A stretch of 64,000 nt of DNA from Macrostomum lignano (taxonomy: Eukaryota), in contig NIVC01001659.1 of assembly GCA_002269645.1 (NCBI GenBank), positions 190,455-254,454 of the forward strand. Direction: 5' to 3'. The notes under the pieces were generated by a model. That model had not been told where the DNA came from, did no database searches, and was given only the letters and a program-made list of their open reading frames with translations. The translations under genes and the position numbers were made by a program. Positions 10,500 to 44,328 of this stretch are shown one piece after another. Every line of letters begins with the position of its first letter. The first letter of the stretch is position 1.

Positions 10500-11340
10500 C
10501 TTAGCCAATAGCAACTTACATGTATGTGTTGCCAGGTAAATCCTTAGGTTGCACAGTATATGAGGGACAGTGCCTCTGGATTGCCTGCAGGTAGTGCAGT
10601 TTGTCTAAATTGAGTGGTGCTAGGTCCTAATCCACACTTTGATGTGCAAGTTGATGACACAGCCAGGAATCAAGACAAGGGATTTGGGAGTTGGGACCGA
10701 GAAAGGAGCCAGAGGTGCCAACTTTTGCAAAGGTATCAGCCAACTCATTTCCTCAGATCTCCATATGCCCTAGAACCCACTTAATGATGATTTTATTGGT
10801 GGAGCCCAACATGTTGAGAAGTTTGATACAGTTAAGGACTGTAGCAGAATTGGTACTACAGCCATTGATGGTATGCAAGGCAGCTTGGCTGTCCAAATAG
10901 AAAATGATATTCTTACTAGTTATACCAATGGCGAGAAACTGCAATGCAGGAGCTGATGGTAAGAACTTCATTTTGGAAGACACTAGAGTTGACCCCAGTG
11001 TACTGAGCATAGGTTGCGATGACCCTCTCATTCAAGAAGATTCCAATACCAAAACCAGTGTTGGCTGACTGCTAAGAACAGTCAGTATAGCAGTGAAGCT
11101 CACCAGGGTTCTAGTGGTCATTGATGGTATTGCACAAGTCAATAGCTATGGAGTAGTGTTGTCTCAGGTTAAGCATTGAAGCAATGCCATTGGGGAAAGC
11201 AGGATTGGCCTGACACTTGTTGAGAATATTGAGGCATAGGTTGCTATGCGGGATGAGGTTCCACTTAGCAGGTGCCCTTATATAAAGGAATTTGACACTG
11301 GCATCAAGTAAACACCGCATTGTTCTAGCCACTTCACCCT
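10500..11340 (-). mobile_element. Decayed non-LTR retrotransposon fragment, RNase H domain (stops and frameshifts)
   Basis: Minus-strand frames give the RNase H motifs in order: LHCYTDCS*..GFGIG, VFQNEVLTI, IIFYLDSQAAL, IKWVLGHMEI*GNELADTFAK. This is the pattern of RNase H-bearing LINEs (I/Loa/R1-type). Confidence 0.82.
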
Positions 11341-11531
11341 TGATTTTAAGTCATTATTCCCTATACTGCTATAATAAAGTTTTCTTTAAAACCATTGAAG
11401 GTCTTATGACTTTGCCAATGTGTAGACCTATACAAATGTATAAAAATAGGGTTTTGCTAATGTCAATGAATAACTTATTAAATAAATTATATAGAATACA
11501 TTAATAAATAAATTTAGGATTATTTACCTAT

Positions 11532-12509
11532 TGAAGTAGTTAGGGTTTCTTCCCAGTTCAGGCACTTAAGATTACCTTAAATCTCGAGCCTCTTCAGTGG
11601 GAAGTTCTCTTAGCTCTCTCAGTAGCGTAGGTAGTGCTGCCACCAGTTCCTTCAGGTCTCGGCCTTCGGTAAGGTGAGCTTCCCGTCGGAACGAAATAAT
11701 GAAGGAAATGAACACAGCACGACGTGCAGATTTGCAGTTCAACATATAAGGCGTCTCATCAGCAGCACCTGCCGGGCTTGGAGGGTACAGGGAGGGCTGA
11801 GTTAGCCTCTCGTAGGCTTGGGGTGGCTTGGTTGGGTCTCAGTCGGAGCAATAGGAACAGATTCAATAAACGCAGAGACTCGGACACTCGGGACTTAGTC
11901 GCACGCGGACGTAGAACTCGAGGTTGAACAGAAAGAAGACTCCTTGACAGAAACAAGGGGGAGAGGGCTCCTATTTATAGCCGGGAAATGCCCGCGCACA
12001 AGACCTTGTGACTTGTTCTATTTTTAGAACTGACGTCACTCGAGAGTCTTGGGCAGGGTACAAGCGTGTGGAAGACCTCGTGACTTGTTCTATTTTTAGA
12101 ACTGACGTCACTTGAGGGTCCCGGCAGAGTACACATGGCTGTGACTCAGTTGCTATTTTTAGCAACATGAGTCACTCCTCTCCTTAGAGAAGGGAGGGGT
12201 CCGAAAGCATGTGACTCACCCAGTAAACAGGGCCAACGAGTGCAGTAAACATGTTTACTGCACTTTAAGATTCAAAGAACGCAAGAGCTGTCATGTGACT
12301 TGCTCACATGACAGAGGAAAACAGGATGGAAACGAAACAGAGACAGCCCACAGTCGAGAGACTGAGGGCTGAGAACGGAGACGCCGCAGCAGGGCGAAAA
12401 GGGACACGGGGGGCAACAGGCAAACGAAAGGGGGGCGGGAAGCTGACCAGCGGCAGACAGCAACCCAAAGGGAGGGCAAGGGAGCGGCTGACAAGGGCGA
12501 CGCCTAACA
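11532..12509 (-). mobile_element. Putative solo LTR (~980 bp)
   Basis: Sharp GC-richer block between AT-rich flanks with TG...CA termini (minus strand TGTTAGG...ACTTCA). TATA-like CTATAAATAG at 11971-11980 lies downstream of duplicated enhancer-like blocks (12005-12175). No 4-6 bp TSD, PBS or internal ORF found. Confidence 0.55.
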
Positions 12510-13150
12510 ATAAACTAGCGGCTCACTACGCTATTTATTTTTCTTAAAATTTTTCAACTCACTTTTGCCAAATGGCCTCTGAGGTCAATACCAATGCAAA
12601 AATCATTGGTATTTATAGAAAGTCTAGTAAATGTAATACTTCAAGGAAAGTCTGATGATTGAGTGGCAAGGACCATAGGTTTTAAACATTTATACTAATA
12701 GAAGCTTTGGAAATGTCATGGGCAATGTATTGCTCTTTGGTCATTGTTGGCTAAGCATGTTTCTATTTATCTTGTACTTAGCGTAGTAAGTATATTACAT
12801 ATAAACATATAATTTTTTACTATTTGCTCTATATGCAAAAACCCCTTTGTTTTTATATTTATAGTATAATAAAATCCTATAAACTATTAAGGCCTTTTTC
12901 TTGATATTATAGTTGGCATTTGCAGCAAAATAGCATTATTTTTATGTAATTGCAATTGGGTGGTCTAAACTGTTATTTTTATCATTGGTTATAACTAATA
13001 TGTTGGCATAAATTCAACAGGGTTACAGGATATTCAAGCTTAAGCACCCTTTGCATAGCAGAAAGTAATGCTAAAAGTTGTAGGACTTTATTACAGCCCA
13101 ACAAGTCAGTGCAGCCTAACCCAGGCAGTTCCAATGCTATTTCAGGTAGC

Positions 13151-40894: not shown

Positions 40895-41228
40895 CTGGCA
40901 CCAGCACCCACCCAAGCCCGTCATGGCACCAGCACCCACCCCAACCAGTCATGGCACCGGCACCCACCCCAGCCCGTCATGGCACCGGCACCCACCCTAG
41001 CCCGTCATGGCACCGGCACCCACCCCAGCCCGTCATGGCACCAGCACCCACCCCAACCCGTCATGGCACCAGCACCCACCCCAACCAGTCATGGCACCAG
41101 CACCCACCCCAACCCGTCATGGCACCGGCACCCACCCCAGCCCGTCATGGCACCGGCACCCACCCCAACCCGTCATGGCACCGGCACCCACCCCAACCCG
41201 TCATGGCACCAGCACCCACCCCAACCGG
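40895..41228. repeat. 28-bp minisatellite immediately 3' of the DNAJC28 stop codon
   Basis: gtcatggcacc(a/g)gcacccacccca(a/g)ccc. Confidence 0.93.
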
Positions 41229-41236
41229 TCAGCCAG

Positions 41237-42794
41237 TCAGCTCTCCTTCGAGCCCTTGAACAGAGCATCCCGCAGGTCGGCCCAAGCCTGCCGCAGGGTG
41301 CTCAGGGAGAACAGATCGGCAGTGCTGAAAGCGTCAAGTTCCAGCCGCTGCCGCTGCTGCTGGGGTCGCACAGGCGGCCGCCAGCTGTGAGCCAGCGAGT
41401 TGTCCTGGGCGATTGGCCGGGCCAGACTGTCCAGCCGGTAGTGGCAGCGCTGCTGCTGCAGGGTGGGCACCGTCAGATTGAGCTGGTCCACCTGCTGGTT
41501 GAGCTCGGACACTGTCGCGGCGCAGTCGGCCAGCGCTCGCTCCCAGGCGGCCGAGTCCGCCTCGCTGAACGGCCAGCGGCCGAGGCGACTGCGGGCATCG
41601 GTCAGCCGGTTGCGGATCTCGGCGGCGCCGGCGCGGACAGCCTTGTCCAGCAGCAGCCAGTCGGGCTCGTAGCCGTTGCTGGCCAGGATGGAGTTGAGCT
41701 TGTGCGTCATCGAGTCCGCGAACGGGTCCGCGTTGCCCCCAGCTGTGCGGTCCGGCAGCGGCTTGCCGAAGTACCGGCAGCTCTGCAGCTCGCCGCGGCT
41801 CAGCGAGTCCTGCGCGGGGGCGGTGGAGGAGGCGTCGGGTACCGCTTCCGCGCTTGGACTCCCGCTCCCTGCTAGCCTTCAGCGGGCTGCCTCTCCTAGC
41901 CTTCAGCGTGCTGCCTCTCCTAGCCTTCAGCGGGCTGCCTCTCCTAGCCTTCAGCGGGCTGCCTCTCCTAGCCTTCAGCGGGCTGCCTCTGCTAGCCTTC
42001 AGCGGGCTGCCTCTCCTAGCCTTCAACGGTCTGCCAGACGCTCTTACAGGGATATTTCTCTTCCTAGAAACCAGCTGGCTTGGATTTCAAAGCACTTCGG
42101 GCCGCACCTGAATGAGATCCTCCACCAGCCTGTCAATCAGCGAGTGCGTCCGGAAATTCTTCGCCGACCGGCGCTCCGAGCTCTTCAATGACGGCGCCGC
42201 GGTGGCCACGGCAGTGCCGGAAGCGGCGGCCGCCTCCTGCTGCAGGCGGGCGATGCGGAACTCGCGGACATTCTCGACGGCCCGGTGCACCCGCCACTGC
42301 TCCCGCTGCCGCTGCCGCTCCGACGGCGTCCCGGAGCCGATGCCGTCGAACTCCAAGTACTGCCGGTGCTGCGGCGCCGTGTGTCGAATGTCGAACCGGC
42401 CCAGCGCCTCCTCCGTGGCCGCCTCAACTGAGAACTCCTCCGTCAAGCCGCCGCTGCCGCTCTGCCGGCGGTGCCGAGCGGCCAGTGCGTAGGCGTCCTG
42501 CGCCTCGATGAACTTGGCGGTGCTTCCGCCGTCGCCGGCCGCGTCCGGGTGGTGCAGCTTGGCCAGCCGGACGAAGGCGGCCTTCAGCTCGGCGTCGGTA
42601 GCATCGGCGGCCACGCCCAGGGCGGCGTAGGCGCGGGCCAGCCTGGCCGACGGGTCACCGGCAGCGGCGCCGCTGCTCGAGCACCGCCATCTGGAGGCCG
42701 AGGCCGCGGTCAGCAGAAGCGGCGTCCGGTGCACCGGCGACTGGATGGACGATCGGCAGAGGTTCGCCAAGATGTCCGAGCGCCGGTGCGCCAG
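41237..42794 (-). CDS. DNAJC28: DnaJ homolog subfamily C member 28-like; exons 42794-42108 and 41809-41237; start codon not located in these exons
   Basis: J domain with HPD (LAKLHHPD), RHTAPQHRQYLEFDGIGSGTPSERQRQ, IDRLVEDLIQ|DSLSRGE..GKPL, DSMTHKLNSILASNGYEPDWL. Phase-0 GT-AG intron at 42107-41810. Confidence 0.9.
41868..42026. repeat. 24-bp minisatellite in the DNAJC28 intron
   Basis: ctagccttcagcgggctgcctctc units. Confidence 0.92.
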
Positions 42795-42829
42795 CTGAAA
42801 GAGATGGATTAGATTGTTAGATTAGATTA

Positions 42830-43730
42830 GATTTGGGAATGGTAGGATGAGATCGAAGGCTAGTAGGGTGGGATCAAAAGCTAGTAGGGTGAGATCTAAA
42901 GCTTTTAGAGTGAGATTTAAAGCTTGTAGGGTGATATTTAAAGTTGGTAGGGTGAGATCTAAGGCTGGTAGGGTGAGATTTAAAGTTGGTAGGGTGAGAT
43001 CTAAGACTTTTAGGTTGAGATATAAGGTTGCTAGGGTGAGATCTAAGGCTGCTAGGGTGAGATCAAAGACTGGTAGGATGAGCTCTAAGGCTGGTAGGGT
43101 GAGATCTAAGGCTGCTAGGGTGAGATCAAGGAGTGGTAGGGTGAGATCTAAAGCTGGTAGGTTGAGATATAAAGCTGGTAGGGTGAGATCTACCGGTAAA
43201 GCTGGTAGGGTGAGATCTAAGACTTTTATGGAGAGATCTAAGGCTGGTAGGATGGTCTCTAAGGCTGATGGGGTGAGATCAAGGAGTGGTAGGGTGAGAT
43301 CAAGGCTGGTAGGGTGAGATCTAAGGCTGCTAGGGTGAGATCAAGGAGTGGTAGGGTGAGATCTAAAGCTAGTAGGGTGAGATCAAGGCTGGTAGGGTGA
43401 GATCTACCGGTAAAGCTGGTAGGGTGAGATCTAAGATTTTTATGGTGAGATCTAAGGCTGGTAGGATGGTCTCTAAGGCTGATGGGGTGAGATCAAGGAG
43501 TGGTAGGGTGAGATCAAGGCTGGTAGGGTGAGATCTAAGGCTGCTAGGGTGAGATCAAGGAGTGGTAGGGTGAGATCTAAAGCTAGTAGGGTGAGATCAA
43601 GGCTGGTAGGGTGAGATCTACCGGTAAAGCTGGTAGGGTGAGATCTAAGATTTTTATGGTGAGATCTAAGGCTGGTAGGATGGTCTCTAAGGCTGATGGG
43701 GTGAGATCTAAGGCTGGTAGGGTGAGATAA
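42830..43730. repeat. ~21-bp minisatellite upstream of the DNAJC28 acceptor (intron or outron)
   Basis: ggtagggtgagatctaaggct units with higher-order recurrence. Confidence 0.93.
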
Positions 43731-44328
43731 ATGAAGCATTATAAGTGCATGAGAGCCTGAATAAGAAATCAGGTATCTAATTTGAAGGAACGGCAGAATC
43801 AAATGCAGTGGCTGGGCACTCGGGGCCCGGCCGATTCAAAGTCAATCTGGTTGCAACAAAAATTAAAAGAATTTGTTCAGCCAAATACAAAGACAATTAG
43901 TAATGAAAAAAAGCGCATTTACAATCAAAGTCAAAGTTGACAGTAGATGAATAAATCAGCGAAGGACAGCGATAAATTGAATAGTTTACCTATAGCCACA
44001 GCAAATTCCTGGACATCCGTAGTGCTGGATCATGAGTGAAAGGTCCAATGGATTTCATGCTTGCCTGACATTCTCTGCATTTAGATTTGGACCCCATGCG
44101 GTTCGGTGGAATTATTATGATTCTGACTAGAAACACGCGCTACTCGCGCATGCCTCGGGTTCGTGAGCACAGAAGTTCGGCGAGTTCAATCTGCATTTAT
44201 TAAAATTGGGCCTTCTAGTTTTTAACATTTCCCAAATTTTGAAGTGCGCACTTCATGCGTGAACATGTTCAGCCGCACCGTTCTCCTGCTACTCAGCGGT
44301 CCTTGGTTCGTATCTGTCAGAATGCAGC

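What the first reader, a model, noticed from the sequence alone, without database searches (positions are those of the whole stretch)
42108..44040. DNAJC28 has no in-frame ATG before its J domain; a spliced-leader AUG would supply it
Seen: the J-domain exon begins at a good acceptor (ctctttcag, plus-strand 42795-42797) exactly in phase 0 and reads LAHRRSDILANLCR..., an Arg-rich, presequence-like N-terminus. It contains no Met in 229 codons; the first in-frame ATG (41710) would skip the whole J domain. The only strong upstream donor (ATAG|GTAAAC, ~43989) cannot help: the phase-0 frame ends in TAG at the junction, and the phase-2 frame hits a stop shortly after splicing. Established: flatworm spliced leaders end in AUG and that AUG can act as initiator. 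Inference: this gene depends on trans-splicing for its start codon, giving M-LAHRR...
Basis: partly seen in the sequence, partly recalled or inferred. Interest (0 to 1): 0.72.

Follow-up and report, generated by a model that had tools for sequence, protein, structure and literature searches.

The report
Flatworm DNAJC28 start codon from spliced leader

Summary
The window is Macrostomum lignano (assembly Mlig_3_7, contig NIVC01001659.1, reversed). The sequence observation holds. DNAJC28 exon 1 (minus strand, 42794-42108) follows a TTTCAG acceptor, has 229 codons with no ATG, and has an in-frame TAA nine codons upstream. The M. lignano spliced leader ends in ATG, and joined at 42794 it reads in frame as M-LAHRR.

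GenBank's transcript-derived models for this copy and for one paralogue begin at exactly that base and are marked 5'-partial. That is what a pipeline that cuts transcripts at spliced-leader read peaks would produce. Locus tags place the gene third in a multi-gene transcription unit.

GenBank uses it for a second paralogue, so "depends on trans-splicing" is too strong for this copy. In the third copy a 10-bp duplication puts a TAG into that mini-exon, while the coding sequence stays intact with mostly synonymous differences.

No RNA reads could be examined, so trans-splicing is inferred rather than shown. Spliced-leader AUG initiation was described in flatworms in 2006 and has been noted for Macrostomum. 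This is a new example of a known mechanism and of low interest.

The parts
42795..42800 (-). 3' splice acceptor TTTCAG. Proposed spliced-leader trans-splice site, which also serves as the cis acceptor.
   Evidence: Sequence. Matches the M. lignano trans-splice motif [T/C]TNCAG. Conserved in all three copies.
42108..42794 (-). DNAJC28 coding exon 1: 229 codons, LAHRR...EDLIQ, no in-frame ATG. Includes the J domain (42632-42486, HPD motif present).
   Evidence: GenBank CDS PAA65381.1 starts at 42794.
41810..42107 (-). Intron 1 (GTGCGG...CGCAG, 298 nt), carrying a 24-nt tandem repeat at 41872-42035.
41237..41809 (-). DNAJC28 coding exon 2 (190 codons plus TGA). Holds the DJC28_CD domain and the only genomic in-frame ATG, at 41710.
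42801..44064 (-). Outron, or alternatively a 1270-nt GC-AG intron when the acceptor hexamer is counted. Mostly a 21-nt minisatellite (42840-43728).
   Evidence: It is 901 nt in paralogue L002.
44065..44097 (-). Candidate cis mini-exon ATG GGG TCC AAA TCT AAA TGC AGA GAA TGT CAG (MGSKSKCRECQ), phase 0, followed by the GC donor GCAAGC (44064-44059).
   Evidence: Identical to the N-terminus of PAA86006.1. Disrupted by a 10-bp duplication in L003.
44252..44266 (-). It lies in the 3'UTR of the upstream gene and has a weak donor.
   Evidence: Used only by the chimeric UniProt model A0A1I8GZ01. The donor GT is absent in L003.
44196..44201 (-). AATAAA poly(A) signal of the upstream gene orf190 (CDS 44901-44329). 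It lies about 100 nt upstream of the mini-exon ATG.

Best explanation
DNAJC28 in this window is a downstream gene of a same-strand, multi-gene transcription unit (MEIOC-like gene, orf190, DNAJC28). Its mature mRNA is made by trans-splicing the 35-nt M. lignano spliced leader (SL) onto the TTTCAG acceptor, so that the mRNA begins ...UUAUUGCAUG|CUGGCGCAC. The SL's terminal AUG sits in phase 0 and acts as the initiator. The product is M-LAHRRSDILANL..., about 55 Arg/Ser/Ala/Leu-rich residues ahead of the J domain, which is what a mitochondrial DNAJC28 would be expected to have.

A minority or by-product RNA can instead be cis-spliced from a GC donor after a 33-nt mini-exon and would encode MGSKSKCRECQ-LAHRR.

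Shown here: the anatomy, the reading frames, the SL sequence (from the literature), and where the annotation models begin. Inferred: that SL reads actually end at 42794, and that ribosomes start at the SL AUG.
For: 1. Organism and locus: the predicted protein is 100% identical to M. lignano PAA65381.1, and locus L001 is contained in the window.
2. The SL ends in ATG (PMC8629364). The Macrostomum SL's final ATG is described as a translation start codon in PMC10468722.
3. SL plus exon 1 is in frame and open.
4. There is no in-frame ATG between the TAA at 42824 and residue 263.
5. The Mlig_3_7 annotation is purely transcript-based. Its TBONE step cuts transcriptional units at peaks of SL-trimmed reads (PMC5730564). 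In two independent copies the CDS starts at exactly the base after the AG. Neighbouring 5'-partial models, by contrast, start at ragged, non-AG positions that differ between copies.
6. Locus tags are Mlig019868g3 here and Mlig016264g1/g2 in the paralogue, which places the gene in one transcription unit with its upstream neighbours. The gap to orf190 is about 1.4-1.5 kb, or about 0.5-0.65 kb once the 889-nt minisatellite is subtracted. That is under the published 1-kb operon threshold.
7. 45% of human-conserved M. lignano genes are SL trans-spliced.
8. In copy L003 both cis ATG candidates are dead: a 10-bp duplication gives ATG GGG TCC AAA TAG, and GAAGTG has become AAATTG. Its CDS is nevertheless intact and differs from this copy by 9 synonymous and 4 nonsynonymous codons, at 1.0% divergence against 2.9% plus indels in the flanking non-coding DNA.
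9. In orthologues the Met lies 20-65 residues before the J domain, so no long missing exon is expected.
10. SL AUG initiation is established in flatworms: Cheng et al. 2006 J Biol Chem 281:733, as summarised in PMC9851317 and PMC12582326.
Against: - No SL-containing read or cDNA was seen; none of the tools gives access to M. lignano RNA data.
- Supplements of the relevant papers do not list the gene.
- The transcript-based GenBank model of the near-identical paralogue L002 uses the cis mini-exon, which is intact in this window with a consensus-like GC donor. A genome-encoded AUG is therefore available here.
- The three copies are only 1-1.5% diverged, so the argument from the broken L003 mini-exon is weak. 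The indel may be very recent, or L003 may be expressed little.
- The AUG context in the SL (U at -3, C at +4) is not a strong Kozak context. That standard comes from my own knowledge of vertebrates.
Confidence: 0.75

Rival explanations
1. The normal mRNA is cis-spliced. A short first coding exon (44097-44065) supplies the AUG, a GC-AG intron of 1270 nt is removed, and the protein starts MGSKSKCRECQ-LAHRR. Under this view the 5'-partial GenBank models are truncated assemblies.
For: - GenBank PAA86006.1 (BOX15_Mlig016264g2, a complete CDS) has exactly this structure at paralogue L002.
- The mini-exon and the donor CAG|GCAAGC are identical in this window.
- It is the best-scoring candidate in the phase-0 scan.
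- An in-frame TAG 14 codons upstream makes this the first AUG of that frame.
- Flatworm acceptors are often shared between cis- and trans-splicing (PMC12582326).
Against: - The mini-exon frame is destroyed in L003 by a 10-bp duplication that creates a TAG, while the main CDS stays intact with 9 synonymous and 4 nonsynonymous codon differences from this copy.
- The models for this locus and for L003 lack the exon and start precisely at the acceptor.
- The mini-exon lies only about 100 nt beyond the upstream gene's AATAAA. In L002, where that signal is TATAAA, orf190 has no separate model. This suggests the L002 model is a read-through precursor RNA, which is an inference.
- The 11 added residues have no counterpart in orthologues.
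Confidence: 0.15
2. DNAJC28 is the C-terminal part of a larger fused protein that begins in the upstream gene orf190, as in UniProt models A0A1I8GZ01 and A0A1I8I123.
For: Two WormBase ParaSite/UniProt models join orf190 to LAHRR.
Against: - The two models use different, ad hoc junctions (...MFTHE|LAHRR and ...PECPAT|LAHRR), and both must splice around the orf190 stop codon, which is conserved in all three copies.
- At 1072 and 3061 residues, these models chain several unrelated genes.
- Orthologues across animals are 335-400 residue proteins with an N-terminal J domain.
- GenBank models keep the genes separate.
Confidence: 0.02
3. Translation starts at a non-AUG codon (the CUG that is the first codon of exon 1) on an RNA without the spliced leader, or the copy is a non-functional pseudogene or an assembly artefact.
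For: The first codon is CTG in this copy.
Against: - In L003 that codon is CTC, so a near-cognate start is not conserved.
- All three copies have intact 419/418-codon frames with the HPD motif and both Pfam domains.
- Substitutions between this copy and L003 are biased to synonymous sites.
- The same structure in three contigs excludes a local assembly error.
Confidence: 0.03

Closest known systems
[quoted passage not shown]
   Same: - The SL ends in AUG and is joined at a phase-0 acceptor.
- The recipient exon has no AUG of its own before a conserved domain.
- In Schistosoma mansoni the SL AUG is in frame in 28% of trans-spliced mRNAs, and more than 40 cDNAs need it.
   Different: - The species (free-living Macrostomum lignano) and the gene (DNAJC28) are different.
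- Trans-splicing and initiation are inferred here, not demonstrated.
- A cis-spliced GC-AG mini-exon offers an alternative genomic AUG in two of the three gene copies.
M. lignano SL trans-splicing and operons (Wudarski 2017, PMC5730564; Ustyantsev & Berezikov 2021, PMC8629364)
   Same: - The acceptor motif matches.
- The gene belongs to a same-strand gene array under one transcription-unit name.
- A repeat-inflated intergenic spacer falls below 1 kb once the repeats are removed.
- The gene is conserved in human, a class enriched for trans-splicing.
   Different: Those papers do not discuss the SL AUG as start codon or this gene. In the public annotation the consequence appears only as a CDS marked 'partial'.
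Shared cis/trans 3' splice acceptors in parasitic flatworms (PMC12582326)
   Same: One acceptor is apparently used both by the SL and by an upstream cis donor, giving different 5' ends.
   Different: Here the choice would also change the N-terminus of the protein (M- versus MGSKSKCRECQ-). The cis donor is of the rare GC type.

Membership tests
SL-AUG-initiated flatworm mRNA (slORF) | The host has a spliced leader whose last three bases are AUG. | tested here: met
   The organism was identified as M. lignano. Its published SL, CGGTCTCTTACTGCGAAGACTCAATTTATTGCATG, ends in ATG. There is no SL RNA gene in the window itself.
SL-AUG-initiated flatworm mRNA (slORF) | SL-containing transcripts end at the acceptor, giving an experimentally mapped trans-splice site. 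| not testable with these tools
   The evidence is indirect only. The acceptor fits the motif. The GenBank CDS 5' ends in two copies fall exactly after the AG, in a pipeline that cuts at SL-read peaks.
SL-AUG-initiated flatworm mRNA (slORF) | The SL AUG is in frame with the main ORF, with no intervening stop. | tested here: met
   Translation of the SL-exon 1 junction reads VSYCEDSIYC-M-LAHRRSDILA.
SL-AUG-initiated flatworm mRNA (slORF) | The trans-spliced mRNA has no genomic in-frame AUG upstream of the conserved domain. | tested here: met
   Exon 1 has 229 codons without ATG, and the first ATG is at residue 263.
SL-AUG-initiated flatworm mRNA (slORF) | Translation actually initiates at the SL AUG. 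| not testable with these tools
   This needs ribosome profiling, a reporter assay or in vitro translation.
DNAJC28 (J-domain co-chaperone, subfamily C member 28) | A J domain with the HPD motif, plus the DJC28 conserved domain (PF09350). | tested here: met
   Pfam DnaJ at residues 55-103 (E=2.3e-10) and DJC28_CD at 223-294 (E=9.7e-11). The motif reads KLHHPDAAG, and invariant columns are shared with animal orthologues.
DNAJC28 (J-domain co-chaperone, subfamily C member 28) | An N-terminal mitochondrial presequence. | tested here: inconclusive
   The first 45 residues have 6 Arg/Lys, 1 acidic residue, and 53% Ser/Thr/Ala/Leu. No dedicated predictor was available, and the mini-exon variant looks similar.
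Downstream gene of an M. lignano operon | A same-strand upstream neighbour less than 1 kb away after repeat subtraction, with the downstream gene trans-spliced. | tested here: inconclusive
   The distance criterion is met: about 1.4-1.5 kb minus the 889-nt minisatellite. Shared transcription-unit locus tags also fit. The trans-splicing itself is not shown directly.
GC-AG cis intron with an ATG mini-exon | A consensus GC donor (AG|GCAAG) and an open ATG exon in phase, conserved among copies. | tested here: not met
   The donor is conserved in all three copies, but the ATG frame is open only in L001 and L002. In L003 it reads ATG GGG TCC AAA TAG.

The most novel reading that the evidence does not exclude
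The same acceptor is used in competition by the spliced leader and by a GC-type cis donor. The gene would then make two N-terminal isoforms, M-LAHRR and MGSKSKCRECQ-LAHRR. A 10-bp indel toggles the genome-encoded start between recently duplicated copies. That would be a snapshot of a gene gaining or losing independence from the spliced-leader AUG, possibly with an effect on mitochondrial import or translational control.
Probability: 0.2. Interest if true: 0.4.

Novelty: new member of a known kind. Interest (0 to 1): 0.2.

Why it matters
The main value is for annotation. In Macrostomum and other flatworms, coding sequences that begin exactly at a trans-splice acceptor are deposited as "partial", or gene predictors fuse them to upstream operon neighbours (UniProt A0A1I8GZ01 and A0A1I8I123 here). 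In fact they are complete once the spliced-leader AUG is added. Adding the leader AUG in silico at mapped trans-splice sites would correct many such models.

Biologically this is one more case of a known flatworm mechanism. The one mildly interesting point is the alternative GC-AG mini-exon, which is intact in two copies and broken in the third.

Tried and rejected
- An Rfam scan of the whole window found no RNA family and so no SL RNA gene. A search for the 35-nt SL with up to 3 mismatches found nothing in the window. The SL gene lies elsewhere in the genome.
- I looked for direct transcript evidence in several places. The 90% protein clusters hold only NCBI and UniRef members, with no RNA-seq-derived contigs for this gene. 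Full-text and supplement searches for Mlig019868, Mlig016264, Mlig001356 and DNAJC28 in the M. lignano papers found nothing.
- A profile search for flatworm orthologues returned mostly insect and nematode proteins and no other flatworm. One 422-residue Logan contig that I inspected has an ordinary 5'UTR and no leader.
- The Cheng et al. 2006 paper itself is not held, so it is cited through PMC9851317 and PMC12582326.
- Presequence statistics do not discriminate between the two possible N-termini.
- dN/dS between the copies is limited by their 1-1.5% divergence.
- Rejected: assembly error (three copies agree), CUG initiation (CTC in L003), and fusion with orf190 (conserved stop codon, inconsistent junctions).
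Full report
**Identity of the window.** The spliced translation of the two exons is 100% identical to Macrostomum lignano PAA65381.1 (BOX15_Mlig019868g3, 419 aa, "partial"). The 21.5-kb locus fetched for that protein is contained, reversed, in the window: GCA_002269645.1, contig NIVC01001659.1, L001 position 1 = window 52794. Pfam finds a DnaJ domain (residues 55-103, HPD present) and the DJC28 conserved domain (residues 223-294). Animal DNAJC28 proteins align over the whole length.

**Check of the observation.**
- On the minus strand, CTCTTTCAG occupies 42803-42795.
- The exon begins at 42794 with CTG GCG CAC CGG CGC (LAHRR) and runs 687 nt to CAG|GTGCGG at 42108/42107.
- Exon 2 begins at 41809 after CGCAG and ends with TGA at 41239-41237.
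- Exon 1 has no in-frame ATG. The frame carries a TAA at 42824-42822, so reading through the acceptor does not help. The first in-frame ATG is at 41710, residue 263.
- The donor ATAG|GTAAAC at 43990/43989 ends in TAG in phase 0. In the other two phases the read-out of exon 1 is out of frame.
- The protein has a single Met in 419 residues, so the lack of internal Met is unremarkable. The real finding is the missing initiator.
- Three assembled copies share this structure (L001 = the window, L002 on NIVC01000297.1, L003 on NIVC01000151.1), which excludes a local assembly error.

I scanned every ATG between the upstream gene and the acceptor for an open frame reaching a GT or GC donor in phase 0. 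The best candidate is a 33-nt mini-exon at 44097-44065: ATG GGG TCC AAA TCT AAA TGC AGA GAA TGT CAG|GCAAGC. Its donor closely matches the AG|GCAAGT consensus that I recall for GC-AG introns. This is exactly the N-terminus (MGSKSKCRECQ) of PAA86006.1, the complete GenBank CDS for the 99%-identical paralogue L002. The mini-exon and its donor are base-for-base identical in the window. The statement that no cis exon can supply the ATG is therefore wrong for this copy.

**Evidence that the acceptor is a spliced-leader site.**
- M. lignano has one 35-nt spliced leader (SL), CGGTCTCTTACTGCGAAGACTCAATTTATTGCATG. About 30% of its genes are trans-spliced, and 45% of the genes conserved in human. The top motif at trans-splice acceptors is [T/C]TNCAG, and TTTCAG fits it (PMC8629364).
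- The Mlig_3_7 annotation is built only from transcripts. Its TBONE step maps SL-containing reads after trimming the leader and cuts transcriptional units at those peaks, and TransDecoder then calls ORFs (PMC5730564).
- In that annotation, the CDS of this copy and of L003 both start at exactly the first base after the AG and are flagged partial. Other 5'-partial models in the same loci start at ragged positions with no AG, and those positions differ between copies. The exact coincidence at the acceptor in two copies is therefore best explained by a mapped SL peak.
- The locus tags (g3 of Mlig019868 here; MEIOC = g1 and DNAJC28 = g2 of Mlig016264 in L002) put DNAJC28 in one transcription unit with its same-strand upstream neighbours.
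- The spacer to orf190 is about 1.4-1.5 kb, of which 889 nt is a 21-nt minisatellite. Once repeats are removed it falls under the 1-kb threshold used to call M. lignano operons.

**Consequence for the reading frame.** SL plus exon 1 reads ...TTA TTG C ATG CTG GCG CAC..., that is M-LAHRRSDILANL, in frame and open. This places the Met 56 residues before the conserved Y-x-x-L-G of the J domain. In orthologues the Met lies about 20-65 residues before that motif, so no longer missing exon is called for. The N-terminus is rich in Arg, Ser, Ala and Leu with one acidic residue in 45, which is compatible with a mitochondrial presequence. The 11-residue mini-exon extension would not obviously spoil that, so this feature does not discriminate between the two starts.

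**Comparison of the three copies.**
- In L003 the mini-exon carries a 10-bp tandem duplication (GGTCCAAATA/GGTCCAAATC) and reads ATG GGG TCC AAA TAG. No ATG-initiated open frame reaches any good donor in that copy.
- The L003 coding sequence is nevertheless intact. It differs from the window copy at 13 of 1260 bases (9 synonymous and 4 nonsynonymous codons). The roughly 490 nt of non-repetitive spacer that holds the mini-exon differs at 2.9% and has 25 gap columns.
- The first codon is CTG in L001 and L002 but CTC in L003. This is a synonymous change, as expected if the codon is read as Leu, and it argues against CUG initiation.
- These arguments are modest. The copies are very young and the polarity of the indel is unknown.

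**How the two readings fit together.** Parasitic flatworms share acceptors extensively between cis- and trans-splicing (PMC12582326). I think the same happens here.
- Main product: the SL-capped, monocistronic mRNA starting at 42794 (the models for L001 and L003).
- Minor product: RNA that still carries the outron can be cis-spliced from the GC donor (the model for L002).
- In L002 the upstream gene's AATAAA is TATAAA, and orf190 has no separate model. This suggests the L002 "gene" is a read-through precursor in which TransDecoder found the mini-exon ATG. That last point is inference.

**Comparison with what is known.**
- The flatworm SL's 3'-terminal AUG as initiator methionine was described for Schistosoma mansoni by Cheng et al. 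2006. [quoted passage not shown]
- All reported flatworm SLs end in ATG (PMC12582326).
- The paper describing the Macrostomum cliftonense and M. hystrix genome assemblies states that the SL's final ATG is a translation start codon (PMC10468722).
- The mechanism is therefore known, and known in this genus. What is new is only that DNAJC28 is an example, with an alternative GC-AG start exon that is polymorphic among paralogues.

**Limits.** I could not reach any M. lignano RNA reads, cDNAs or browser tracks. The protein collection has no RNA-derived contigs for this gene, and the papers' supplements do not list it. Trans-splicing at 42794 and initiation at the SL AUG are therefore strongly inferred and not shown. 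My estimates:

| Claim | Probability |
|---|---|
| The acceptor is SL trans-spliced | about 0.9 |
| The SL AUG is the main initiator | about 0.75 |
| This particular copy strictly depends on it | clearly lower, because the mini-exon is intact |

**Verdict.** This is a new member of a known kind, of low interest beyond its use for correcting annotation.

Noticed in passing
window 42840-43728: A 21-nt minisatellite (about 42 copies, consensus TGGTAGGGTGAGATCTAAGGC on the plus strand) with a 214-nt higher-order period (x4.1) fills most of the outron/intron upstream of DNAJC28 exon 1. The interval is 1270 nt here but 901 nt in paralogue L002, so copy number varies between copies.
   Followed up: partly
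window 41872-42035 and 40896-41231: A 24-nt tandem repeat (6.8 copies) lies inside DNAJC28 intron 1, which is 298 nt here and 394/395 nt in the paralogues. A 28-nt repeat (12 copies) starts 6 nt after the DNAJC28 stop codon, in the presumed 3'UTR.
   Followed up: partly
window 52794-41237 (minus strand): A same-strand array: PARP-domain gene (above 51397), MEIOC-like gene (48156-46540), orf190 with no Pfam domain (44901-44329), and DNAJC28 (42794-41237). GenBank locus tags number several of them as g1/g2/g3 of one transcription unit, which suggests an operon-like precursor.
   Followed up: partly
L002 9742-10270 and CDS 10935-12585: In paralogue L002 the orf190 poly(A) signal reads TATAAA instead of AATAAA, and orf190 has no separate gene model. 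Its DNAJC28 carries four private nonsynonymous changes and a one-codon deletion just after the HPD motif, against one synonymous change. This may reflect relaxed constraint on that copy.
   Followed up: partly
UniProt A0A1I8GZ01 (P0019, 3061 aa) and A0A1I8I123 (P0017, 1072 aa): These older M. lignano gene models are chimeras that chain neighbouring genes. Each joins orf190 to LAHRR through a different improvised junction (...MFTHE|LAHRR and ...PECPAT|LAHRR). This looks like what a gene predictor does when a trans-spliced exon has no ATG.
   Followed up: partly
L001 4639, 7894, 15834 (window 48156, 44901, 36961): Several neighbouring GenBank CDSs are 5'-partial and begin a few codons before or after an obvious genomic ATG, for example ATG GCA|GCA CCA for MEIOC and ATG GCA ACC CAG CCT|CGC for orf190. 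Their deposited N-termini are therefore artefacts of transcript-end calling, not real protein starts.
   Followed up: partly
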